The notes beneath the pieces are model-generated. The model did not search any database. It worked only from the letters and a program-made list of their open reading frames with translations, and was not told the origin of the DNA. A stretch of DNA of 64,000 nt from the IMG/VR virus record IMGVR_UViG_3300042566_001512, positions 1-64,000 of that record. One strand, 5' to 3'. Numbering within the stretch: position 1 is the first letter of the stretch; every line of letters begins with the position of its first letter. Made by a program: the position numbers and the translations under genes. Below are positions 4,730-26,804 of this stretch, in pieces.

Positions 4730-5560
4730 TCATCTATTAGCGCCAACTGCAAGCTTAATAAGGCGGTGGAATGCTGGCGTGTCGTTCATCACAGATATGG
4801 CCATCCAAGACTTAAGTTTATCTTGATAATTCTGCTCGGCGTCAGCATAACTTTCTACAATTTGCTTGAACACCCCCAGTGACTGACCGCCCTGTAATTC
4901 ACCCATATCCATGTCGACAATTAATTCATTGTAAATATATGATTTTACAGCAAATTCTACTAGCTGGGCAAAGTCCCTAAAGCTCCTTGGCTGTATGTTG
5001 CTTAGGTTTTCGTCATTTTCTAAAGTACATCTTAGTACCGCAGTGGGCGGCATAGCAAACACGTCTTTTATCATTATGGTGTTTTCCGCTACCAGCTGTG
5101 CGTCAGAAGTGGAGGTTATTGGTATTCTATCCAAAGACGCCATTATTCCCAATGCGGCGTTCATGCTTGCAGTGTTTTCAGTCATGTCTATTGACGCGTT
5201 GTATCCGTACCCTGGTGCGCCGGAGTATAGGCCCGATATGCCCAAATCGTAGTAATTAACGTTGCTAACTGATATGATTGATTTATTATTAGTTCTAGTT
5301 TTAGGTATGTGAATTATGGTGATGTAGTTATTTGGTTTATCTATAGGTAAACCATCAAGCGGAATCATGGCAGTGACTCCACCTACCAAATTACAATCTA
5401 ATAAAACGCGAGGCCGTAATACCATAGTGAGCATCTGGTCATCGACGTTGGTCTGACTAGTAAATCTATAGTCAAACGTTCTTTTAATAAATGCTTTTTC
5501 TAATATATGCTTATTTATTCTTCTTTTAGTTTCCGCGATTGAATACCTGATAATATCCAT
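4730..5560 (-). CDS. Conserved phiKZ-like protein, probably virion/neck
   Basis: 276-aa ORF divergent from tubulin; synteny. Confidence 0.6.
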   Translation of the reverse strand: MDIIRYSIAETKRRINKHILEKAFIKRTFDYRFTSQTNVDDQMLTMVLRPRVLLDCNLVGGVTAMIPLDGLPIDKPNNYITIIHIPKTRTNNKSIISVSNVNYYDLGISGLYSGAPGYGYNASIDMTENTASMNAALGIMASLDRIPITSTSDAQLVAENTIMIKDVFAMPPTAVLRCTLENDENLSNIQPRSFRDFAQLVEFAVKSYIYNELIVDMDMGELQGGQSLGVFKQIVESYADAEQNYQDKLKSWMAISVMNDTPAFHRLIKLAVGANR

Positions 5561-5778: not shown

Positions 5779-6810
5779 ATGACCACTACACAAAAAAATA
5801 CCATAAACGTTATTGGCTGCGGCGGAGTTGGCCTTAACATCGTCAATATGCTGGAGCCGGCTCGTAATTCTGAAATTACTGGGTTTGCAAAATACAAGCT
5901 GTGTTATGTAGACACTAGTAAATCCAACATGATCAGAAAGAAAATCAATCCGGACGATGTATTTCTTTTCGAGGACATGGACGGATCTGGTAAAATTCGA
6001 AAAGAAAATCACACCGCCATCGCGGCAAATACAAAAGCGATTCTCCAAAAATTCAAACCTACAGATTTCAATATCGTGGTGCACAGCGCATCCGGGGGCA
6101 GCGGTAGCGTTTTGGCTCCGAGCGTGGTGTCCGAGCTGCTCAAGGCAGGAAAGGAAGTCATCGTCATCGTAGTGGCTTCTTTTGGTTCTGTAATTGAAGT
6201 GGAAAACACCACAAAAACTCTCCAAACTTACGAATCCATCTCTGAGCTTCGAGAGAAGAATGTCAACGTTGTTTACATGCAAAACAGCGTTACTGAAAAC
6301 AATGAGTTGCAAATCAATTCTCAAGCGATGCACATGCTGTCTCTCTTGCTGGGCTTGCTGTCCGGAGAGCACGAACAGCTAGATACGGCAGACCTGAAGA
6401 CCTGGCTAAACCACAACAAGGTCACTGGCAACCCGACGTGTATCAACAACGTGCTGGTTGGTTATGGTCCGGAGCTTCGTCCCCAATATACCGAAGATCA
6501 CTTTGTAATAGAGAATCCGATATCTGTGGCCACTTTGGCAACTCGAGACATGAACACCCGGTACAGTCACACTCCGTCCATTAAATTCGAAGGATACGTT
6601 CCTTCTCAATGGTCTACCGGAGATGCGAGCGGACTCACTACTATTAAAGACGAAGCCATCCACTTTTGTGTGATGGAAGACAAAATGGAGTCTATTTACA
6701 AACACCTGGCTAACTTCCTAAAAGAGCTAAGGGCCGCAGAAGGAAGCAGAGTGCGTAGAAAATCCATTTTGGGAGACGCAAACGTTACGGATGACGGGAT
6801 GGTTTTGTAA
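5779..6810 (+). CDS. phuZ: PhuZ tubulin-like spindle protein
   Basis: IGCGGVG, DGSGK, tubulin signature HSASGGSGS, acidic tail TDDGMVL. Confidence 0.93.
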   Translation: MTTTQKNTINVIGCGGVGLNIVNMLEPARNSEITGFAKYKLCYVDTSKSNMIRKKINPDDVFLFEDMDGSGKIRKENHTAIAANTKAILQKFKPTDFNIVVHSASGGSGSVLAPSVVSELLKAGKEVIVIVVASFGSVIEVENTTKTLQTYESISELREKNVNVVYMQNSVTENNELQINSQAMHMLSLLLGLLSGEHEQLDTADLKTWLNHNKVTGNPTCINNVLVGYGPELRPQYTEDHFVIENPISVATLATRDMNTRYSHTPSIKFEGYVPSQWSTGDASGLTTIKDEAIHFCVMEDKMESIYKHLANFLKELRAAEGSRVRRKSILGDANVTDDGMVL

Positions 6811-6898: not shown

Positions 6899-7567
6899 AT
6901 GTTAGCAATGGACATTAATAACTTGGAAATAGAATCTACTCTTACGCTTAACGTGGAGGATTGCGCCGGCTACATAGAAACCTACTGTTGTGATTTTCTA
7001 CTTCCTCCGCCAAAGGGTATCTACAGCAATAGCAGGATCGACCCCGTAATGAGGGATGGCGGGAACTACTATACGGTGCAAATTAATAAAGGTCAGATAA
7101 AAAGAACACAGGTCACTGATCTAAATAAAGTTAAAAAGGGTTTATCTGTATATACTGAGATAAATGGAAAAGACACGGTTGTAGTTACTAGCATGCAACT
7201 GCAAAATAAAGACAGGTGTCTTGGTACTCTGCCAATCAGACCTTACCGAGGCGTCAAGATAGTGGAGCAGTTGATCAATAACCAAGTGGATGGATTTATA
7301 AAATATCGCAAAGGTTCTAAGGATCTTTACAGCGGGATAACTTGCCACATGATCGAAAACATAACAGATGAGCAACTAGAAGACGTAGTATCTGTTATAA
7401 AAGAGCAATATTCTGAAATTCGTAAAGTCTTGCGAGATTTCATGGGTAAGCACGATTGGAATTTGTATTTTGTGTCTCTAAAAAGTGGCAATGCTACAAT
7501 TCAAAAGTCCATAGACTGGAGAGCGTACGACTGGATGTGTAGGATGGAATCTAAAGAGTGGTCATAA
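6899..7567 (+). CDS. Conserved hypothetical protein
   Basis: 222-aa ORF, first gene of the operon preceding the DNA polymerase. Confidence 0.75.
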   Translation: MLAMDINNLEIESTLTLNVEDCAGYIETYCCDFLLPPPKGIYSNSRIDPVMRDGGNYYTVQINKGQIKRTQVTDLNKVKKGLSVYTEINGKDTVVVTSMQLQNKDRCLGTLPIRPYRGVKIVEQLINNQVDGFIKYRKGSKDLYSGITCHMIENITDEQLEDVVSVIKEQYSEIRKVLRDFMGKHDWNLYFVSLKSGNATIQKSIDWRAYDWMCRMESKEWS

Positions 7568-7951
7568 ATGATAGTAGCCATAGACTTTAGGGATGCATTG
7601 CAGGAGTTTTCTGACTCGCTTGGTGTTGATCGTCGTGACACTGACTCTATGTGGTACGTGGCAGATTTATTTGATATGCTTCTAAAGGCCGCACTTGATT
7701 CAAATAAAGAGTACAAAAAACAAATAGACGGGTTAGTAAGTAAACTTCAGGCCGAAACCGGAGAACCCAGATCTATTTGTCAGAGCTCGTGCGACTTAGC
7801 AATAACTCAGGTGCTTAACAAAATGGATGAAATATTCGCTAACGTAAGACACATCGATCTCTATAAAACGTCTAAGGACGTAAATAGAGCCAACGGCTCA
7901 ATGTCCGTTTACACGATTAACGTAGGCGAGCTGTCCCTAACCTACATCTAG
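7568..7951 (+). CDS. Hypothetical protein (tandem array member 1)
   Basis: 127 aa, abuts previous stop. Confidence 0.7.
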   Translation: MIVAIDFRDALQEFSDSLGVDRRDTDSMWYVADLFDMLLKAALDSNKEYKKQIDGLVSKLQAETGEPRSICQSSCDLAITQVLNKMDEIFANVRHIDLYKTSKDVNRANGSMSVYTINVGELSLTYI

Positions 7952-7954
7952 AAA

Positions 7955-8329
7955 ATGATTCTAAAGATAAGGTTTGTAGATACTCTGCATTGTATAGCGG
8001 AAATGGCCAGCGCCGACGCGGCCGACAAAGAAGCAAACGCGTTATTGGATCTATTGGTTATTTCTGTGTTTTCTGACCACGTCTATTATAAAGAAAAAAA
8101 CGTAGAAGAAAAAATTAATAGACTAATAAATACGATGTCAATAAGTCCAGAGTGTTTAGAAGAAATAACGCTGTCTCTTTTCTCAGAGATGGCCGAACAC
8201 TTTTCCATATTTGCGATACCTCAACCAGCATCCACGTATAAGTCGCCATGCGTATACAAAACATCCAAAGCAACTTACTGTCTCTTAACGAATCAGGTAC
8301 TGATAAAAATGCCCAGAATCGAGCACTAA
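7955..8329 (+). CDS. Hypothetical protein (array member 2)
   Basis: 124 aa, tightly packed. Confidence 0.7.
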   Translation: MILKIRFVDTLHCIAEMASADAADKEANALLDLLVISVFSDHVYYKEKNVEEKINRLINTMSISPECLEEITLSLFSEMAEHFSIFAIPQPASTYKSPCVYKTSKATYCLLTNQVLIKMPRIEH

Positions 8330-8778
8330 AACAACTAACAACTTGCGTGGTGCGCAGCAAAGATTTGCATAATTTGGATTTATTGCTAAAAAGCGAATTC
8401 CCTACCATCTACGAACTAATAGGCGGTGCAGAGGGGTTGCTAATGTGCGCCGATAACGGCGACAATAAAATAGTAGAAATATCTAAAGATAGAGAAAAAC
8501 TACACGATAGATTGGCCAATGAATGTTACGCGGTATTAGATGGCGCTGCTCAAAACGAAAGTTTTCATTATAATAATTACATGTTGCCAAGTGAGCTAGA
8601 CAGGGAGTACTTGAGCTGGGGTTTTACCGACACTCTTTTAAAACTAACAGACATTTATCGGCAAATAATCACAGATGACATGTCCGACGTTTTAAAAAAT
8701 GAAAAAAACATAGTAATCGTAAATATAGTTAGATCTCCAATCAGGGAGGTCTACTATGTTCAGTTTAGCAGTAAATAA
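8248..8778 (+). CDS. Hypothetical protein (array member 3; start uncertain)
   Basis: Up to 176 aa; overlaps previous gene. Confidence 0.6.
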   Translation: MRIQNIQSNLLSLNESGTDKNAQNRALKQLTTCVVRSKDLHNLDLLLKSEFPTIYELIGGAEGLLMCADNGDNKIVEISKDREKLHDRLANECYAVLDGAAQNESFHYNNYMLPSELDREYLSWGFTDTLLKLTDIYRQIITDDMSDVLKNEKNIVIVNIVRSPIREVYYVQFSSK

Positions 8779-8786
8779 ACGAGCTA

Positions 8787-9143
8787 ATGAAGATTTTAGT
8801 ACACCTTCCAGAAGTGGCAAAGTCCCTAGGCGATAAAGAATTTAACAAAACGGCACCAACGGTGGACGTGGACGCATTAGTTGACTACATATGCGGGGAA
8901 TACATTTTTAGCTCTGACATAGATAATGTCTTAATAAATTGTTTAGATTCTCTGGGCAGCGTGACGGACTACTACAACTGCGACATTTCTTACAATAAAT
9001 TGGTATCGACTATTTACGCCACGATTGTGGATATATATGGTAGACTGGATGAATACATGATACGAGAAAACGTAGCATACGGTAAAAATAATCTTCGTCT
9101 TCAATGTCGAATTGGGGATTTGTATGTATTTGAATTTCAATAA
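8787..9143 (+). CDS. Hypothetical protein (array member 4)
   Basis: 118 aa. Confidence 0.7.
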   Translation: MKILVHLPEVAKSLGDKEFNKTAPTVDVDALVDYICGEYIFSSDIDNVLINCLDSLGSVTDYYNCDISYNKLVSTIYATIVDIYGRLDEYMIRENVAYGKNNLRLQCRIGDLYVFEFQ

Positions 9144-9588
9144 ACAGCACAGTAGACGACCTCCTAAATTCGTAAACGTTAATGTTAGCGGATTTACTAA
9201 ATCCGTTTACGAGTTAGAAAAAGACACAGGTCTTATTATAGACTGCTCTGACATCTTAAAAGAGATAACCTGTTGCATAAAAGACAAAATGTGCGCACAG
9301 GTAGAGCTGGAGATGTACGGTCTTTCTTTAATGGAGAGTCAGTGTCACTCTGACAGAGACGAAGAAGTCAATAAGATAATTCGTTTATTTATAAATACGG
9401 GCAATCTGGTTTACCAGGAGTGCTTAGATCACGGTCTTTATGATGGAAACACCTTGGGATTCGTTTTCAGCAATTGTGTTAAGGATAATTTAGTATTTAT
9501 AGAAAGAACCAGTATGGTGGAGATACTTCGCGATGAATTCAATACGGTTACTACTAGATACCCGATGTTTGTTCAAGTATCTTGGTGA
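9112..9588 (+). CDS. Hypothetical protein (array member 5; likely start MYLNF at 9124)
   Basis: About 154 aa. Confidence 0.65.
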   Translation: MGICMYLNFNKQHSRRPPKFVNVNVSGFTKSVYELEKDTGLIIDCSDILKEITCCIKDKMCAQVELEMYGLSLMESQCHSDRDEEVNKIIRLFINTGNLVYQECLDHGLYDGNTLGFVFSNCVKDNLVFIERTSMVEILRDEFNTVTTRYPMFVQVSW

Positions 9589-9913
9589 AAACGAATACTA
9601 CGCCAGACTAACACCGGACGATAAAACAGAAATAATACAACAGGCATTTGATGTTTTATCAGATCGGTATTGGCACGAACAAAATCAAGGAAAGAAATAC
9701 GTAGTACTAGATTTACTTAAAACAAAACCGCTGGAGCACAAACGCTCCAGCGTAGATTCTTTATTTAATTTTTTGTGTTTTGAATTAGAGATTCTAATAA
9801 AAGAGCATCTTCGCTCAGAACTCGAACTAATAAAGCATATACAGGATTTTGCCTTGATAAATAATTTGATTGTTATACAGTTTACTAAAGGAATTAAAAA
9901 ATATGTTTTATAA
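9533..9913 (+). CDS. Hypothetical protein (array member 6)
   Basis: 126 aa, GGAG RBS. Confidence 0.7.
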   Translation: MNSIRLLLDTRCLFKYLGENEYYARLTPDDKTEIIQQAFDVLSDRYWHEQNQGKKYVVLDLLKTKPLEHKRSSVDSLFNFLCFELEILIKEHLRSELELIKHIQDFALINNLIVIQFTKGIKKYVL

Positions 9914-10298
9914 CTTAGAATTAGGAAAGTCCTACGATTTTACCTTATACGCAAGCGGTGTTCTTGGCTCCGGATTTAGGAACTCAAAAGTGGTAGGCAT
10001 AATGGACTACGACTCCGCTAAATATATACAGGATGTTTCTCCCCTGCATATTCAAGCTTATCCTCAGCTTCCTAGCGGAACCCCTAGGAACGCCAGAGAC
10101 TTAGTATATGTGAAAATAAAAACGCCACTAAACGAGCTACGTGTTATAGCCATGGATTGGATATCGTCCGTTCCGGTTCTTGTTACATCGCAGGCCGCCA
10201 GAGTTACTATTAGCCAAATAAGCTCATCTGACGTTAGCATTATTAGGGACCTTCTCGTCGTCAACGGATACCCTAATTTAGACATCCAGCTTTTGTAA
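9903..10298 (+). CDS. Conserved hypothetical protein (phiKZ gp49-like)
   Basis: ATG 9903 with AAAGGA RBS; last gene before the polymerase. Confidence 0.65.
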   Translation: MFYNLELGKSYDFTLYASGVLGSGFRNSKVVGIMDYDSAKYIQDVSPLHIQAYPQLPSGTPRNARDLVYVKIKTPLNELRVIAMDWISSVPVLVTSQAARVTISQISSSDVSIIRDLLVVNGYPNLDIQLL

Positions 10299-10311
10299 AC
10301 GTATATTGTAT

Positions 10312-10696
10312 GTGCGCAACTAATTGATGTGCGCGCCAGTTTTGCTGTTCCGTCACTCTTTTGGCTGACTTGATCCTATTAGCTCCGTTTACGAAATTGC
10401 AAATGATCCATCTGCGTCATTTTTGCTCTAAACGAGAACGCTACTGAAAGATCAACGCTCAGTTGGGAGAGTGACGGGACACATTTATGATGTTTAATAG
10501 TATGGCTAGGAAATGCGGGTCCTGGCCAATAGCATTCGACGAGTCGGCATGTTTTTTCATCTTAGTTCAAATTGGCGTTTCGGTTTCCTTTAGCTGATTG
10601 AATTGATTTGCTTTTAACCGCAGGTAAGTCGTTTGCGTCCTTTGTTGTGTTGAGTGGGTAGTAAATAGGGAGGGGCATTGCCCCTCCCTATTTATG
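10312..10696 (+). ncRNA. Candidate structured non-coding RNA
   Basis: No ORF of 60 aa or more; nested G-U-containing helices 10333-42/10569-78, 10346-59/10468-81, 10361-68/10459-66, 10370-75/10450-55, 10386-91/10429-34; ends in a hairpin. Confidence 0.6.
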
Positions 10697-10738
10697 TTTA
10701 CAACATAAATGCCCATGGCAGGCCCATGGGCATTTATG
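10662..10738. terminator. Two tandem hairpins
   Basis: taaatagggaggggca/tgcccctccctattta and cataaatgcccatgg/ccatgggcatttatg. Confidence 0.75.
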
Positions 10739-10816
10739 ACATATTTTTAAAAAATCAATATCTTTGCAAGATACTTTGAATGAGCTATAAACGAATAACC
10801 TTAAGGATGGCAGATA

Positions 10817-12964
10817 ATGTCTAAAAATCCATTTGTACTTGCAACATCGGAATATAAAAGAGACATCAATATAATAAAACACTATGTTGACCAGCAAGCA
10901 TCTTATCTTAGCATATCTACTGGTAAAGATTTAAACACGTGTATTGAATTTGTTAAATCCAGCCTAAGAAAAGGCGGACAGTTTGAATTTAAAGACCCCA
11001 AGATAAAGTATCTGGAAAGGGGTGATAACGGGGATAGAACAGAAAAGGAAGGAACTGCTTGGGCCTACATATCTGAATCTGTTAAGAACAGAGAACTGAT
11101 TTCCCCGACACTTACTACATATGTTCACCCAGACGTAAAGGGGTCTTTGCTTTCGGGATTCCTTGAGAAAAACGTGGCCCTTAGAAACAAAGCTAAGAAA
11201 GAGATGTTTGAGGCTCAGGTGAACAAAAACACAGAAGTGGCCCAGATGAAAGCCACTGAGCAAAAACAAAATAAACTATCAAACAACAGCGTATCGGGGA
11301 TGCACTGTTCCCCCGCTAATCCAATATATAACGAAACCGGGCACTCGACTCTCACCAGTAACTGCAGAAGCACTTCCGGTTATGGGAACGCTAACAACGA
11401 AAAGTTTTTAGCCGGAAATAGGCACTATTATAACCACCACATCGTCTTAAATAACATAATGTCTATCGTGACCAACGTAGATTATTCTTTAATGGACGAA
11501 GTTATAAAAAAGTACGGGCTTTGCTACCCTAGCGTGGAACAGACCCTCGATTGTATAAAATACTCATCTAACCTTTATTGGTGGGAGAGTCACTATTTCA
11601 GAAAAATAGAAGACCTAGTATGTAAACTAACCCCACTTCAACGAGCTGCGTTTGTGTACGTAGGGGACTTTTATCATTTGATGAAATTTAACGATGAGTT
11701 TGTAAGGGGCTTCTTAGGTGAACTGACAAAGAAGGTCGAGTGCAAGTTTGACGGTAATCCGGTGGATTACATAAGGTCATCTGATGAAATATACGTAAAC
11801 ATGGCTCACCAGATCTGCGCACAGGAAGTAAAGGGATTTGGTAAGAAGTACGATCAGCTAAAAGAAGAAGATGTTAACACGCTAGCGTGCACAGTAAGAA
11901 ACATAGAAAGCTGTTTTAATAATCATTCTGATCTGGTTAAAGCCTTTTGGGTAACCACTAACATGCCAAGCTCAATGGCGTACTTCCCCACTAGCTTAAG
12001 AAGAGTGGCGCTAACCAGTGATACCGACTCCACTATATTTACCGTTCAATCGTGGATACATTGGTATCGTGGATATTACACAATGGACGACGGGGCCATT
12101 GCTCTAATTGGTGCACTTACTGCATTGGCTTCATTGACGATTATTCACGTGTTAGCAATGATGTCTGCTAACTTTGGCATAGTAGAAAAACACATTCATC
12201 GAATAGAGATGAAAAACGAGTATAGGTTTGACGTATTCGTCCCTACTCAGCTAGGAAAACATTATTACGCAAACATGGGCTGCCAAGAAGGTAACGTGTT
12301 TGAAAAACACAAAATGGAAATAAAAGGAGTATATCTTAAAAGCTCAAATTTGCCTGGCATAATAAATAAAAAGGCCCAGGAAATGATGAAGCGAATTACA
12401 GATGAGGTCATGACTATAGGGAAAGAAAACCCCAGGCCTATAAGCATAAAAAAATATATTAAAGAAGTAGCAGACATAGAGCGCCTGATAGTCGATTCTA
12501 TAAAGAATGGCGAAACCTACTTTCTTAAGTCATCCAGCATAAAAGACGCTCAAAGCTATTCTAAAGAAGGTAACGAATCGCCTTATAAACATCATTTATT
12601 CTGGAACGAAGTATTTGGAAATAAGTACGGAATTGTTCCCGAACCACCATATAGCACAATTAAAGTATCTACCATAATTGAAAATAGGACAGACCTCAAG
12701 AAATGGCTAGACTCTATACAAGACCCTACAATTAAAAATAAAATAGAAAACTGGATAAGTAGGACCGGTAAGGATAGTTTTGGAACATTTAACCTTCCTA
12801 CACAGGTTCTCAAAAATACAGGTATACCGATTGAAATAACCGGCATAATCAACTACAAAAAAATCATTATTGATCTTTGTTCTATATTTTACTTAATTTT
12901 GGAAACCCTGGGCGTCTACCTTTATGATGATAAGGTAGCTAGATTGGCCAGCGATTTTTACTAG
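10817..12964 (+). CDS. Family B DNA polymerase, polymerase subunit (phiKZ gp50-like)
   Basis: Motif B KLSNNSVSG, motif C SDTDS, KHYY, EIKGV; lacks exonuclease and motif A. Confidence 0.88.
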   Translation: MSKNPFVLATSEYKRDINIIKHYVDQQASYLSISTGKDLNTCIEFVKSSLRKGGQFEFKDPKIKYLERGDNGDRTEKEGTAWAYISESVKNRELISPTLTTYVHPDVKGSLLSGFLEKNVALRNKAKKEMFEAQVNKNTEVAQMKATEQKQNKLSNNSVSGMHCSPANPIYNETGHSTLTSNCRSTSGYGNANNEKFLAGNRHYYNHHIVLNNIMSIVTNVDYSLMDEVIKKYGLCYPSVEQTLDCIKYSSNLYWWESHYFRKIEDLVCKLTPLQRAAFVYVGDFYHLMKFNDEFVRGFLGELTKKVECKFDGNPVDYIRSSDEIYVNMAHQICAQEVKGFGKKYDQLKEEDVNTLACTVRNIESCFNNHSDLVKAFWVTTNMPSSMAYFPTSLRRVALTSDTDSTIFTVQSWIHWYRGYYTMDDGAIALIGALTALASLTIIHVLAMMSANFGIVEKHIHRIEMKNEYRFDVFVPTQLGKHYYANMGCQEGNVFEKHKMEIKGVYLKSSNLPGIINKKAQEMMKRITDEVMTIGKENPRPISIKKYIKEVADIERLIVDSIKNGETYFLKSSSIKDAQSYSKEGNESPYKHHLFWNEVFGNKYGIVPEPPYSTIKVSTIIENRTDLKKWLDSIQDPTIKNKIENWISRTGKDSFGTFNLPTQVLKNTGIPIEITGIINYKKIIIDLCSIFYLILETLGVYLYDDKVARLASDFY

Positions 12965-14426: not shown

Positions 14427-16289
14427 ATGGCAATTACCGATACCAACAAAGTCAACGCTCTGCAATCGCAACTGAGCGGCGCTAACATGAATCAACAACC
14501 ACAGCAGCAGTCTTCTGCACCGGCCCCAATGAGCTTCATGAACCTGGGGTACAACTTCGGCCTGACGCGGTCCACCACCGACGAAGCCCTTTCGCGCGCT
14601 CTTGCCGTCTTCAAGGAAGACATCAAGAAGCAATTTGAAGATCGAAAGATCGATCCCTCTTTTGAGATCAGTCTTCTGGCCGTCGATTCCAGCAAGGGCA
14701 CGGGTGTTCGTTTCTCTGGCATCGTGGTAGCCACTACCCACAAGGAAATTCCTCAGTCTGTGGCCATTCATACGGTGCTGGTGGAGGGCTCTTCTGACCC
14801 CATCGTTCCGAAGATCGAATCGGCACGCGGTGTTCAATACGAGGTCATGTTGACTGCCGGCGACACGATCGACCGCACCTACGTCGAGGAAGTTCGACGG
14901 ACGGTGGAAAAGGCCTACCCTGGCTATCGCGTGATCAACGCCGATGCTCAAGTGCTGCATCGCGATTTCAACTACGAAGACAAGAACCAGGTGCGCACAT
15001 TTGTGCAAAACTTCGTTCTTCCCACCACCACCATGCTGGTGACCAGCGCACAGGGCTTCCAAGACCTGAACCTGGGCCGCATTGAACGAGACACCTCTAT
15101 TGGTGTTCAGCGCTCCTTCAACGAAAACCAGATGCTGGACTACTCCGGCCACCCGGTCCGTACAGACATCAAGGTTACGGTGAGTGCGTATACTGGTCAA
15201 AAGGGACAGAGCGGTTCGCTAAATACCCAGGAGCAATCTCGGGTGCTGGCTATCGTGGGTGGTTATATCGACACGGTTTGGTCTGACGAAGCCGTATCCC
15301 CGATGACGAACATGATGATGGGCCCGAAGCCCAAGTTCAGGGCTCGCCTGGTGATGACTGCGCTGGAAAACCAAGCAATGCAGACCATCCCTGCTCAGCT
15401 GTTTGCGCTTTCGGGTTCCATGATCCTTCGGGAAGGTAATAACTGGTTCTCCTACTTCACTCCTCGTCGCCTTGCGGCAGGTGCGCATCGTGTCGATAAG
15501 CGTGACGTCGGCGCTCTCAACATCGAGGGAAATATTTCTAATGACCCGAGCGGCTTTGATAAGCTTTTCGATACAAAGGATTCTGGCTTTGACGGAATGG
15601 CTCTTCAGCGTTACATCACCAGCCTGTTCATCCCCGGTATGTACTTTACTCTTCGTGTCAGCGAAGCTGGAGCAGATACCTGGTACAACAGCGTCTTCAA
15701 AGCGGCGGCAGACGGTAACCCGAGTGCCATTTCCGCCATTCTGGCAGGTGCCAACACTCTGACCAACGGCAACTTCCAGAAGTTCTACACTTCGGGCTCG
15801 TCGCCCGTTCTGAAGAACGAAGATCGTGTTCACATGGGCTACTACGTAGACGCCAACGGTGTTAAGTGCGACATCGCTGACATCGACTACATCGCCATCA
15901 TGAATCTGGTTGGCCGAAACGACCCCAGCGTCGGTGCAGCTTGGTCCAATACTTTCTATGCAACAAACGAACCCCTTAACGTTCGTATGGCCGCACGCTG
16001 GAAGATGATCAATGAAGTTGTCGGCGGTACCGCTGTCCTCACCGGATACGGTCGTCTGGTGACCTTCACCAACGAGTTCATTGAAGCCTTTAGCAAGGCA
16101 GTAGCAGCCACCGGCCTGACCATTCGTCAGATTGGTAACAACGATAGCGCGCTGTTCCAACAGCGCGCTGGCGCGAGCTTCCTGGCTGGCGCTGACGTTG
16201 CACCTGGTCAGACCGGGCTGTTTAACTACGGTTCGGGCATTCCTGCACAGCAGTCTGGTGGTTTTGCGTTTAACCAACGCACCTACTGA
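14427..16289 (+). CDS. chmA: Chimallin, major phage nuclear shell protein
   Basis: 620 aa; strong RBS; GC-rich codon usage suggesting high expression; directly upstream of nvRNAP beta'-N as with phiKZ gp54; GHPVRTD and RVHMGYY motifs. Confidence 0.85.
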   Translation: MAITDTNKVNALQSQLSGANMNQQPQQQSSAPAPMSFMNLGYNFGLTRSTTDEALSRALAVFKEDIKKQFEDRKIDPSFEISLLAVDSSKGTGVRFSGIVVATTHKEIPQSVAIHTVLVEGSSDPIVPKIESARGVQYEVMLTAGDTIDRTYVEEVRRTVEKAYPGYRVINADAQVLHRDFNYEDKNQVRTFVQNFVLPTTTMLVTSAQGFQDLNLGRIERDTSIGVQRSFNENQMLDYSGHPVRTDIKVTVSAYTGQKGQSGSLNTQEQSRVLAIVGGYIDTVWSDEAVSPMTNMMMGPKPKFRARLVMTALENQAMQTIPAQLFALSGSMILREGNNWFSYFTPRRLAAGAHRVDKRDVGALNIEGNISNDPSGFDKLFDTKDSGFDGMALQRYITSLFIPGMYFTLRVSEAGADTWYNSVFKAAADGNPSAISAILAGANTLTNGNFQKFYTSGSSPVLKNEDRVHMGYYVDANGVKCDIADIDYIAIMNLVGRNDPSVGAAWSNTFYATNEPLNVRMAARWKMINEVVGGTAVLTGYGRLVTFTNEFIEAFSKAVAATGLTIRQIGNNDSALFQQRAGASFLAGADVAPGQTGLFNYGSGIPAQQSGGFAFNQRTY

Positions 16290-25319: not shown

Positions 25320-26804
25320 ATGCAATACCAAAATAACGCCAATGCAGCTTACGGATACTCCTCTGTAGAGATTGTTCGTATAATTATGCAAGAAACCGGC
25401 ACTTATAACACTATGATGCGGCGGCCATTTGAATCGCATCTCACTGGCTCAGTGCAAAACACCATTGTGGAAAACTGCGAAATGGCAGGTAGAATTACTC
25501 CAAATCTACTTACTGGAGTAGCTGGGCAGTTCATTCGACCAAGTGCGACTCCAGAGCGACCCATTAACATTGTAAACGGCTGGGAAACTAGGCGGTTTAA
25601 GTTTTTCATGGAGGTGCGGTCGACCAGTCACATGGGGAACGTTATCACCCAGTTCATCACTGGCTACACCGATCAACTCGGCAGCAGTGTATTTGGAAGC
25701 CTCGACCCTGATATGGAGTTCTTCATTAACACTGTTAATATTGCGAAAAATGCAATTAGGACAACTCCTATGGGTTCACAAAACATCCAGAGTATCGTCG
25801 ATTGCTCTCATCTTCTTTATCAAAACGACTATAACGGCGTCCATGGTCTTAACAACGGATACAAGATGAGGCCGGAGGACGTTTTCGCTTCAATGCAAAA
25901 TGCTCAATTGGAAGAAGCATCTAACCTGTATGGAGGCAGCAGTGAGTTTGTGGACACGCGAACACATCTGACTAGAAATCCCGTTAAGGCGATGAGGAGA
26001 TTTAATTCTTCACCTGTGTTTGTATCTAGTGTTCTAGACAGCTACGTCCAAACCAAGCGTGCGGCCATAGGAGGCTCTAGCGAGCTAGAGATCACCGACA
26101 GCGCAGCTGCTTCCGTAGCTTCGGCAAGAACAAACGAAGACCCTTTCTTGAGAACACTAAAAGGAAGAACCGACTCTAATGGTGGCAGCTTTCGATTGAG
26201 GGATCTGCTTAATATTGACCCCACGGTAAAGAGCAGAATTGTAGTAACGCCAATGACCCCGGCCCTGAGGGCAACTCTGCCCGCTGCCGGTCAAAGTCAG
26301 CACTGGCAAAACAGCGATTACGACACACAGTTTGCCACGGCATTGAGTCAAGCCGTGCCCGGTTACATGCTGGACAACTGTTTGCAATCGGTCAAGTTTC
26401 GTGCAACGAACATGGAAATGGGCGGTGCCATTACGGTCATCCTGGTAGATTTCGGTTCATTGCTTCAGGGTATTGATATCTCTCCTTATCTTGCTTCTTT
26501 TAGTTTTTCCATAGAGAAAACCGTGTTGTCGGATCTATCTCACAACAACATGATACCGTTTAGCCTGGAGATGTCATGCAACCTAATGAGTGAGAGCACT
26601 GTAAATCTTTCTGTAAACGGATCGCCCTATACCCTGTTCGTTTCTCCGTGTTTCTGCGACGGTCTGATGTCCCCATTGGTAACCGCGGATAAGAACAGGC
26701 TAAATCTACTGGCAAAAGATATATCTACGGTAGTCGACTATCTAGGCGATGCAACCGGTTCTGTGATGGGCTTTGCAGAAACGACAACCGAAAACTTCAT
26801 TTAA
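25320..26804 (+). CDS. picA: Nuclear-shell protein importer PicA/Imp1 (phiKZ gp69-like)
   Basis: 494 aa; ETGTYN…RRPF, IVNGW…RFKF, TGYTD, RPEDVF; synteny. Confidence 0.72.
   Translation: MQYQNNANAAYGYSSVEIVRIIMQETGTYNTMMRRPFESHLTGSVQNTIVENCEMAGRITPNLLTGVAGQFIRPSATPERPINIVNGWETRRFKFFMEVRSTSHMGNVITQFITGYTDQLGSSVFGSLDPDMEFFINTVNIAKNAIRTTPMGSQNIQSIVDCSHLLYQNDYNGVHGLNNGYKMRPEDVFASMQNAQLEEASNLYGGSSEFVDTRTHLTRNPVKAMRRFNSSPVFVSSVLDSYVQTKRAAIGGSSELEITDSAAASVASARTNEDPFLRTLKGRTDSNGGSFRLRDLLNIDPTVKSRIVVTPMTPALRATLPAAGQSQHWQNSDYDTQFATALSQAVPGYMLDNCLQSVKFRATNMEMGGAITVILVDFGSLLQGIDISPYLASFSFSIEKTVLSDLSHNNMIPFSLEMSCNLMSESTVNLSVNGSPYTLFVSPCFCDGLMSPLVTADKNRLNLLAKDISTVVDYLGDATGSVMGFAETTTENFI

What the first reader, a model, noticed from the sequence alone, without database searches (positions are those of the whole stretch)
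7568..9913. Six tandem ~120-150 aa genes with one layout: possible diverged family of nuclear-import adaptors
Seen: each begins with a short hydrophobic strand followed by a helix (MIVAIDFRDAL, MILKIRFVDTL, TCVVRSKDL, MKILVHLPEV, KFVNVNVSGF, IRLLLDTRCL). Each has a helical-looking core and ends in a probable beta-hairpin (…SVYTINV, …ATYCLLT, …EVYYVQF, …DLYVFEF, …NLVFIE, …NLIVIQF). Sequence identity is not obvious by eye. From recollection, phiKZ genes at this position (gp47/gp48) were reported as accessory nuclear-import factors. Inference: a paralogue array giving cargo specificity to PicA/Imp1, or a hetero-oligomer.
Basis: inference. Interest (0 to 1): 0.6.

Follow-up and report, generated by a model that had tools for sequence, protein, structure and literature searches.

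The report
Fast-evolving small-gene array beside phage DNA polymerase
Six small genes of a nucleus-forming jumbo phage sit where phage phiKZ keeps its accessory nuclear-import factors; three are clear paralogues of a large unnamed protein family, but common origin of all six and an import role are not shown.

Summary
The window is the first 64 kb of an uncultivated chimallivirus (nucleus-forming jumbo phage). It encodes PhuZ, chimallin and an Imp1/PicA homologue.

The six ORFs at 7568-9913 are real, tightly packed genes under purifying selection. They fill a slot that is conserved across the family: gp43-like gene, then small genes, then SH3DP, then DNA polymerase. In phiKZ this slot holds gp44-gp48, including Imp2 (gp47) and Imp4 (gp48).

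- **g4, g5, g6:** paralogues in a large family with no Pfam, PHROG or NCBIfam model covering it (731 cluster representatives at E<=1e-3). No solved structure resembles it.
- **g1:** only a weak link to that family. g2 links only weakly to g1.
- **g3:** unplaced; its model failed (pLDDT 54).
- **Link to Imp2/Imp4:** rests on synteny plus weak fold hits to Imp2 homologues. Profile comparisons were negative.
- **Binding to Imp1:** the complex prediction gave no verdict.

The array evolves faster than its flanks and varies in gene number; g6 is absent in seven relatives.

Most likely these are lineage-specific accessory factors of the phage nucleus, as import adaptors or co-imported proteins. That function is inferred, not shown.

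The parts
5779..6810 (+). PhuZ tubulin (context; left end of the conserved block)
   Evidence: tblastn hits annotated 'tubulin PhuZ' in 137 phage records at about 32% identity.
6899..7567 (+). g0, a conserved 222-aa gene; left anchor of the array and gp43-like
   Evidence: 62-76% identical in close relatives and found in distant loci. The family HMM hits phiKZ gp43 residues 47-147 (E 2.5e-4), RSF1, LucasX, Xoo-sp14 and Eowyn.
7568..7951 (+). g1, 127 aa
   Evidence: 15 orthologs at 59-72% identity. pN 0.16-0.18 against pS above 0.85. Weak profile link to the g5 family: P 1.6e-3 and 6.6e-3, below all 54 null alignments. Weak link to g2: P 2.8e-3.
7955..8329 (+). g2, 124 aa; the fastest-evolving member
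   Evidence: Orthologs are 31-47% identical and the gene is cut to 64 aa in L002. No link to the g5 family (P 0.33). Its HMM hits the array protein L005_2 at E 4e-4.
8347..8778 (+). g3, 143 aa from GTG 8347 (longest ORF from ATG 8248)
   Evidence: Ortholog alignments start at the GTG. No profile link to any other array gene. The AF2 model has low confidence, pLDDT 54.
8787..9143 (+). g4, 118 aa; paralogue of g5
   Evidence: hhalign against the family profile built without the window clade gives P 3.1e-6 over 90 colinear columns and P 2.4e-5. The reciprocal HMM search hits family representatives at 6e-5 to 6e-4 and no decoys.
9124..9588 (+). g5, 154 aa; best-defined member of the family
   Evidence: Its profile finds 731 cluster representatives at E<=1e-3. 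AF2 gives pLDDT 80.8 with a strand, four helices and a hairpin. BFVD hits are almost all chimallivirus proteins.
9533..9913 (+). g6, 126 aa; paralogue of g5, present or absent among relatives
   Evidence: hhalign P 6e-5 over 95 colinear columns. The reciprocal HMM hits family members at 5e-4 to 6e-3. Absent in L026-L032 and present in L002, L034 and L035.
9903..10298 (+). g7, SH3DP domain protein (phiKZ gp49 equivalent); right anchor
   Evidence: Pfam PF20287 at E 3.4e-22. 72-84% identical in relatives.
10704..10748 (+). Terminator-like hairpin (15-bp stem) with a T-run, closing the PhuZ-to-SH3DP block
   Evidence: Goslar and LucasX carry annotated terminators at the same position.
10817..12964 (+). 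DNA polymerase (phiKZ gp50 equivalent)
   Evidence: Its orthologs in the close relatives (715 aa, same position after SH3DP) carry Pfam PF20286 divDNApol. 45-80% identical in 13 metagenome loci.
14427..16289 (+). Chimallin (phage-nucleus shell protein); context
   Evidence: Pfam PF25677 at E 3.7e-27.
25320..26804 (+). Imp1/PicA homologue (putative partner); context
   Evidence: tblastn finds matches in 157 records. Over 95% of its length it is 26.5% identical to phiKZ-like phages (E 7e-38). The 201phi2-1 hit lies on gp125, annotated 'similar to phiKZ gp69'. gp69 is Imp1 and 201phi2-1 gp125 is its homologue.

Best explanation
The region is an operon-like array of six small, fast-evolving genes in a chimallivirus. 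It fills the family-wide slot between the gp43-like gene and the SH3DP/DNA-polymerase pair. In phiKZ that slot holds gp44-gp48, including the cargo-specific import factors Imp2 and Imp4.

g4, g5 and g6 arose by tandem duplication. They belong to a large, unnamed family found almost only in chimalliviruses, built as an N-terminal strand, four helices and a C-terminal hairpin. g1 and g2 are probably a further diverged pair. g3 is a separate or unrecognisably diverged lineage.

The most likely role is inferred, not shown. Each protein would be a lineage-specific accessory factor of the phage nucleus. It would bind one cargo or partner and pass through, or assist, the Imp1/PicA import route encoded at 25320-26804, acting as an adaptor or co-imported escort. 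Duplication, loss and rapid divergence would then retune which proteins enter the nucleus.
For: **Shown**
- Chimallivirus identity: PhuZ, chimallin and an Imp1 homologue are present.
- The genes are real and under purifying selection.
- Synteny of the slot holds in phiKZ, PhiPA3, 201phi2-1, Psa21, PS119XW, Goslar, RP12, RSF1, Eowyn, LucasX, Xoo-sp14, pVa-21 and 10 metagenome loci.
- g0 matches gp43 and g7 is an SH3DP gene, the gp49 equivalent.
- Paralogy of g4/g5/g6: hhalign P 3e-6, 2e-19 and 6e-5, against a minimum of 0.03 in 54 null alignments. Reciprocal HMM searches agree.
- A genome-wide scan of 406 ORFs ranks g5, g6, g4 and g1 among the top five.
- Distant genomes carry three clear paralogues side by side, for example L009 genes 3 and 4 at E 1e-9.
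- The array evolves faster than its flanks: 31-73% identity against 62-84%.
- Gene number varies among relatives.

**Literature**
- Imp2 and Imp4 are needed for import of Nlp1 and TopA, and Imp2 is itself imported through Imp1.
- Neither gene tolerates transposon insertion in phiKZ.

**Weak**
- The g5 model hits the Imp2 homologues PhiPA3 gp044, Psa21 (183 aa) and PS119XW (264 aa), and other Psa21 proteins that match array genes by length, at TM 0.27-0.40.
Against: - No sequence or profile similarity to the Imp2 family, even with a 40-sequence profile (P 0.34), nor to the Imp4, gp45 or gp46 groups.
- The fold hits to Imp2 homologues lie below the usual same-fold threshold (TM under 0.4).
- g2 and g3 are not linked to the family.
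- No localisation, interaction or genetic data exist for this phage.
- Sitting next to the DNA polymerase fits a replication role equally well.
Confidence: 0.45

Rival explanations
1. The array proteins are themselves nuclear cargo with a job in replication or transcription, for example accessory subunits or regulators of the adjacent DNA polymerase/SH3DP module. They would not be import adaptors.
For: The array is co-oriented and tightly packed with the SH3DP gene and lies just upstream of DNA polymerase in every genome examined. One terminator follows SH3DP. phiKZ Imp2 is imported into the nucleus, so these proteins may act inside it.
Against: Core replisome accessories are usually conserved. 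These genes are among the fastest-evolving in the block, and their number varies. No match to any known replication family in Pfam, PHROGs, NCBIfam or PDB. The phiKZ genetics ties two slot members to import of unrelated cargo, Nlp1 and host TopA.
Confidence: 0.22
2. The array is a host-takeover or counter-defence cassette. Small, rapidly diversifying paralogues would each neutralise a host factor, unconnected to nuclear import.
For: Rapid divergence, duplication, loss (g6) and truncation (g2 in L002) are typical of arms-race genes. There are no known domains.
Against: The slot is kept at one fixed place across the whole family, next to core nucleus and replication genes, whereas accessory cassettes usually move. 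In phiKZ, imp2 and imp4 lack disruptive transposon insertions even in a laboratory host. Their mutant phenotype is loss of import.
Confidence: 0.13
3. Only g4-g6 are related. g1, g2 and g3 are unrelated small ORFan genes that happen to share size and a common alpha/beta pattern, so the 'family of six' is partly an illusion.
For: g2 and g3 give null-level hhalign P values (0.33 and 0.077). g1 reaches only 6.6e-3. In distant genomes, position-1 and position-2 proteins form their own groups, not linked to the g5 family. The g3 model lacks the N-terminal strand.
Against: g1's P value is below all 54 null alignments, and its match is colinear from the first strand. g1 and g2 align from residue 1. 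L002's g4 ortholog hits a position-1 protein, L006_1, at E 4e-4. Structure was not tested for g1 and g2 and failed for g3.
Confidence: 0.3

Closest known systems
phiKZ Imp2 (gp47/orf47) and its homologues (PhiPA3 gp044, 201phi2-1 gp79, Psa21 gp042)
   Same: Second-to-last gene of the small-gene array upstream of SH3DP and DNA polymerase, the position of g5. Similar size. Read by eye from the alignment, it has the same order of a short N-terminal strand, helices and a C-terminal hairpin. Three homologues appear among the top 36 BFVD fold hits of the g5 model.
   Different: No detectable sequence or profile similarity. Fold scores are weak (TM 0.33-0.38). Its function, Nlp1 import and its own import through Imp1, is known only for phiKZ and PhiPA3.
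phiKZ Imp4 (gp48/orf48)
   Same: Last array gene before SH3DP, the position of g6. About 127 aa. A Psa21 protein of the same length as its Imp4 homologue (126 aa) is a weak BFVD hit.
   Different: No profile similarity to any window gene. The role in TopA import cannot be tested here.
Unnamed chimallivirus family typified by Ralstonia phage RP12 ORF008/ORF009 (small PHROGs 31369 and 35374)
   Same: g5, g4 and g6 match its profile. RP12's 180-aa protein is the best fold hit (TM 0.61, E 8e-5). It lies at the same array position.
   Different: Identity to the window's genes is only about 10-19%. No function has been described for any member, and the family is not recognised as one unit in Pfam or PHROGs.

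Membership tests
Chimalliviridae (nucleus-forming jumbo phages) | Encodes chimallin, PhuZ and Imp1/PicA | tested here: met
   Chimallin PF25677 at E 3.7e-27. PhuZ. Imp1 homologue at 25320-26804.
g5-type array family (unnamed) | Significant profile match to a family profile built without the window's own clade | tested here: met
   g5 P 2e-19, g4 P 3e-6 and g6 P 6e-5; the minimum over 54 null alignments is 0.03. g1 is inconclusive at P 6.6e-3. g2 (0.33) and g3 (0.077) do not meet it.
g5-type array family (unnamed) | Fold of strand, four helices and C-terminal hairpin | tested here: inconclusive
   Met for g5 (pLDDT 80.8). The g3 model is unusable (pLDDT 54). g1, g2, g4 and g6 were not folded.
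g5-type array family (unnamed) | Located in the array between the gp43-like gene and SH3DP/DNA polymerase | tested here: met
   No clear member elsewhere in the 209-kb genome.
phiKZ Imp2 (gp47) family | Sequence or profile homology to gp47 | tested here: not met
   A 40-sequence Imp2 profile against the family gives P 0.34 and against each window gene P 0.14-0.56. tblastn of gp47 finds Pseudomonas phages only.
phiKZ Imp2 (gp47) family | Same genomic slot (array upstream of gp49 SH3DP and gp50 DNA polymerase) | tested here: met
phiKZ Imp2 (gp47) family | Shared fold | tested here: inconclusive
   The g5 model against PhiPA3 gp044 gives E 0.048, TM 0.33. Against Psa21 (183 aa) it gives E 0.074, TM 0.38. 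Against PS119XW (264 aa) it gives E 0.094, TM 0.35. Targets other than PhiPA3 gp044 were identified by organism and length only.
phiKZ Imp2 / Imp4 import adaptors | Required for import of a specific cargo; imported through, or acting with, Imp1 | not testable with these tools
   This needs genetics and microscopy. The one complex prediction (g5 with the Imp1 homologue) gave no verdict.
phiKZ Imp4 (gp48) family | Sequence or profile homology to gp48 | tested here: not met
   The gp48 group against all window gene alignments gives P above 0.02, and against the large family profile P 0.28.

The most novel reading that the evidence does not exclude
Imp2/Imp4-type cargo adaptors are not a Pseudomonas-phage speciality. 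They would be the phiKZ representatives of an ancestral, family-wide array of rapidly duplicating and diverging small alpha/beta proteins at a fixed locus. Each chimallivirus lineage would use its own set to define which phage and host proteins enter the phage nucleus. This would be a diversifying family of import receptors or adaptors encoded next to the replication genes.
Probability: 0.3. Interest if true: 0.75.

Novelty: new variant of a known kind. Interest (0 to 1): 0.55.

Why it matters
How the phage nucleus chooses its cargo is an open question. Published genetics names Imp2, Imp4 and Imp5 as cargo-specific factors, but reports them as restricted to phiKZ-like Pseudomonas phages.

If the conserved, hypervariable array described here is the family-wide counterpart of those factors, two things follow. 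Every chimallivirus would come with a short list of candidate adaptors. And rapid turnover of the array would explain why import signals differ between species.

Even without that link, the work defines a large protein family (at least 731 cluster representatives) with a predicted fold that has no solved relative. It is confined to one genomic slot of nucleus-forming phages.

Tried and rejected
- **Complex prediction, g5 with the Imp1 homologue:** no verdict (score 0.00). This is not evidence either way.
- **AlphaFold2 of g3:** pLDDT 54, unusable. Its BFVD search returned only unrelated viruses.
- **ESM Atlas:** the feature search for g3 gave eukaryotic 'hypothetical' clusters and the Atlas holds no model of it. 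The shape search with the g5 model gave TM no higher than 0.38.
- **Family libraries:** Pfam, PHROGs and NCBIfam gave no credible hit for g1-g6. The g6 hits, a PHROG 'tail assembly chaperone' at E 0.003 and Pfam UCR_UQCRX at 17.6 bits against a cut-off of 27, were dismissed as noise.
- **Shallow profile comparisons:** hhalign among the six ortholog-group alignments showed only g1~g2, P 2.8e-3.
- **Position-1 and position-2 groups of distant loci:** not linked to g1/g2 or g3.
- **phiKZ-group profiles (gp43 to gp48) against window genes:** nothing at P below 0.02.
- **Deeper Imp2 profile:** negative.
- **megablast of the region against phages:** no match.
- **IMG/VR scans:** gave one relative only.
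- **Reading g1 and g2 through the intervening TAG to fold both at once:** considered and not done, because nothing in the genome shows another genetic code.
Full report
**What the window is.** The window is the first 64 kb of a 208,807-bp IMG/VR virus record, estimated 76% complete. It encodes a PhuZ tubulin at 5779-6810, about 32% identical to known PhuZ proteins. It also encodes chimallin at 14427-16289 (Pfam PF25677, E 3.7e-27) and multisubunit RNA-polymerase pieces. A 494-aa protein at 25320-26804 matches 157 phage records, including 201phi2-1 gp125, annotated 'similar to phiKZ gp69'. gp69 is Imp1/PicA and gp125 is its homologue (paper 10.1101/2024.03.27.586873). So this is an uncultivated member of the Chimalliviridae, distant from every sequenced phage; megablast found nothing.

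**The observation.** Six co-oriented ORFs lie at 7568-9913, packed with spacings of -56 to +17 nt.
- g3's conserved protein starts at GTG 8347, not at the upstream ATG 8248, because ortholog alignments begin there.
- g5 most likely starts at ATG 9124.
- Orthologs of g1 found in the 5.8-billion-protein collection led to ten further contigs carrying the locus, besides one IMG/VR relative.
- Against the three nearest relatives, non-synonymous differences (pN 0.16-0.38) are far below the saturated synonymous ones (pS 0.63-0.98) for all six. They are real genes under purifying selection.
- They diverge faster than their neighbours. Identity to the window is 31-73% for g1-g6, against 62-76% for g0 and 72-84% for the SH3DP gene.
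- Gene content varies. g6 is absent from seven relatives (L026-L032), where the g5 stop lies about 95 nt from SH3DP. g2 is cut to 64 aa in L002.

**The slot is conserved across the family.** The order in phiKZ is PhuZ (gp39) ... gp43, gp44, gp44.1, gp45, gp46, gp47, gp48, gp49, gp50 DNA polymerase ... gp54 chimallin.
- The same order, a gp43-like gene, then 5-11 small genes, then SH3DP, then DNA polymerase, is seen in RP12, pVa-21, RSF1, Goslar, LucasX, PS119XW, Eowyn, Xoo-sp14, PhiPA3, Psa21 and 201phi2-1.
- It is also seen in ten metagenome loci whose polymerase is 45-52% identical to the window's.
- The window's g0 family HMM hits phiKZ gp43 (E 2.5e-4), RSF1, LucasX, Xoo-sp14 and Eowyn. g7 is an SH3DP protein (PF20287).
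- A strong terminator-like hairpin follows g7 at 10704-10738, where Goslar and LucasX have annotated terminators.
- So g1-g6 are the positional equivalents of phiKZ gp44-gp48, which are also six genes.

**Are the six related to each other?** Pairwise blastp shows only g1~g2, 24% over 110 aa.
- *Paralogy in distant loci.* In distant loci the last three array genes are plainly paralogous, for example L009 genes 3 and 4 at E 1e-9. They share a C-terminal motif with a nearly invariant tyrosine.
- *Size of the family.* An HMM iteration seeded on g5 gathered 28 array proteins, including the L002 ortholog of g4. A profile search of 1.84 billion representatives found 731 proteins at E<=1e-3 and 181 at E<=1e-10.
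- *Profile tests.* I built a 148-sequence profile without the window's own clade and compared it with each ortholog-group alignment:

| Gene | hhalign P | Aligned columns |
|---|---|---|
| g5 | 2e-19 | 144 |
| g4 | 3.1e-6 | 90, colinear |
| g6 | 6e-5 | 95, colinear |
| g1 | 6.6e-3 | 36, from the first strand |
| g3 | 0.077 | 34 |
| g2 | 0.33 | 1 |
| g0 / g7 (controls) | 0.17 / 0.14 | 57 / 9 |

- *Null and reciprocal checks.* Fifty-four reversed or column-shuffled versions of the six alignments gave a minimum P of 0.03. Reciprocal HMM searches from g4 and g6 hit only family members, at 6e-5 to 6e-3, in a pool with about 400 decoy ORFs.
- *Genome-wide scan.* Scanning all 406 ORFs of the genome with the independent family HMM put g5, g6, g4 and g1 among the top five.
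- *Conclusion.* g4, g5 and g6 are paralogues. g1 is a weak candidate, and g2 ties only to g1 (P 2.8e-3) and to one distant array protein. g3 is unplaced.

**Structure.** Only two folds were allowed.
- g5, folded with a 29-row alignment, gave pLDDT 80.8 and pTM 0.69. It has strand 16-20, four helices, a hairpin at 113-127 and a short extra helix.
- Against BFVD, the hits are nearly all chimallivirus proteins. They are led by RP12's 180-aa array protein (TM 0.61, E 8e-5) and RP31's 131-aa protein.
- g3 gave an unusable model (pLDDT 54). Its BFVD list was random viruses, which shows that the g5 list is not a database artefact.

**Relation to Imp2 and Imp4.** The literature confirms that orf47 is Imp2. 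It is needed for Nlp1 import and is itself imported through Imp1. orf48 is Imp4, needed with Imp5 for TopA import. Both are reported as conserved only among Pseudomonas phiKZ-like phages and are later called cargo-specific adaptors. Neither tolerates disruptive transposon insertions.
- *Sequence tests were negative.* The phiKZ-group alignments (gp43 to gp48) against the window genes gave nothing at P below 0.02. A 40-sequence Imp2 profile against the family gave P 0.34.
- *Fold evidence is weak but not random.* PhiPA3 gp044 (Imp2 homologue, E 0.048, TM 0.33), a 183-aa Psa21 protein and a 264-aa PS119XW protein are in the top 36 BFVD hits. The last two match the Imp2 homologues by organism and length. 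Three other Psa21 proteins with the lengths of array genes (305, 165 and 126 aa) are in the top 50.
- *Binding.* The complex prediction of g5 with the Imp1 homologue returned no verdict and is not used as evidence.

**Interpretation.**
- *Established:* a conserved, hypervariable small-gene array, partly made of demonstrable paralogues of a large unnamed family, at the Imp2/Imp4 locus of a new chimallivirus.
- *Inferred:* the proteins are lineage-specific accessory factors of the phage nucleus, acting as adaptors or co-imported escorts through Imp1/PicA.
- *Rivals:* replication accessories of the neighbouring polymerase; a counter-defence cassette; or a mixed array in which g1-g3 are unrelated ORFans.

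The region is not a member of the Imp2 or Imp4 sequence families, because that test was run and not met. It may still work like them.

Noticed in passing
L027:464-3241 (also L028, L031); window PhuZ 5779-6810 for comparison: In three close relatives PhuZ is split. Residues 2-99 and 119-343 are separated by an HNH/NUMOD4 endonuclease gene (L027:1215-2441). This is probably a homing-endonuclease intron or insertion. The window's PhuZ is intact.
   Followed up: partly
window 10299-10816; L026:6987-8243, L027:6961-8217: Some relatives carry a 418-aa gene between SH3DP and DNA polymerase; in L027 it has Pfam phiKZ_IP (PF12699). The window has only a 519-nt spacer there, with a strong terminator-like hairpin at 10704-10738.
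   Followed up: no
window 9533-9913 against L026-L032: g6 is present or absent among close relatives. It is present in the window, L002, L034 and L035 and absent in seven contigs.
   Followed up: yes
L002:10138-10332: The g2 ortholog in the IMG/VR relative ends after 64 aa. This is either a pseudogene or a sequencing frameshift.
   Followed up: no
phiKZ NC_004629 223379-223849 (gp220); locus L041:2880-3350: phiKZ gp220, far from the array, is a weak hit to the g5-family profile: E 2.6e-4 per genome, but only 0.009 with the larger profile. It may be a dispersed family member.
   Followed up: partly
window 9729-9752: A palindromic hairpin with a 9-10-bp stem (7 G-C pairs) lies inside the g6 coding region and is scored terminator-like on both strands. 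Its significance is unknown.
   Followed up: no
window 6899-7567: g0 is homologous to the N-terminal part of phiKZ gp43, a 357-aa protein. The family shares a C-terminal D-W/Y-R-x-x-x-W motif, seen by eye across phages. The g0 HMM also gives a weak hit to g4 (E 0.034).
   Followed up: partly
window 4730-5560 (-): A conserved 276-aa gene lies divergently upstream of PhuZ. Its orthologs at the same position in the close relatives carry Pfam DUF7484 (PF24302).
   Followed up: no
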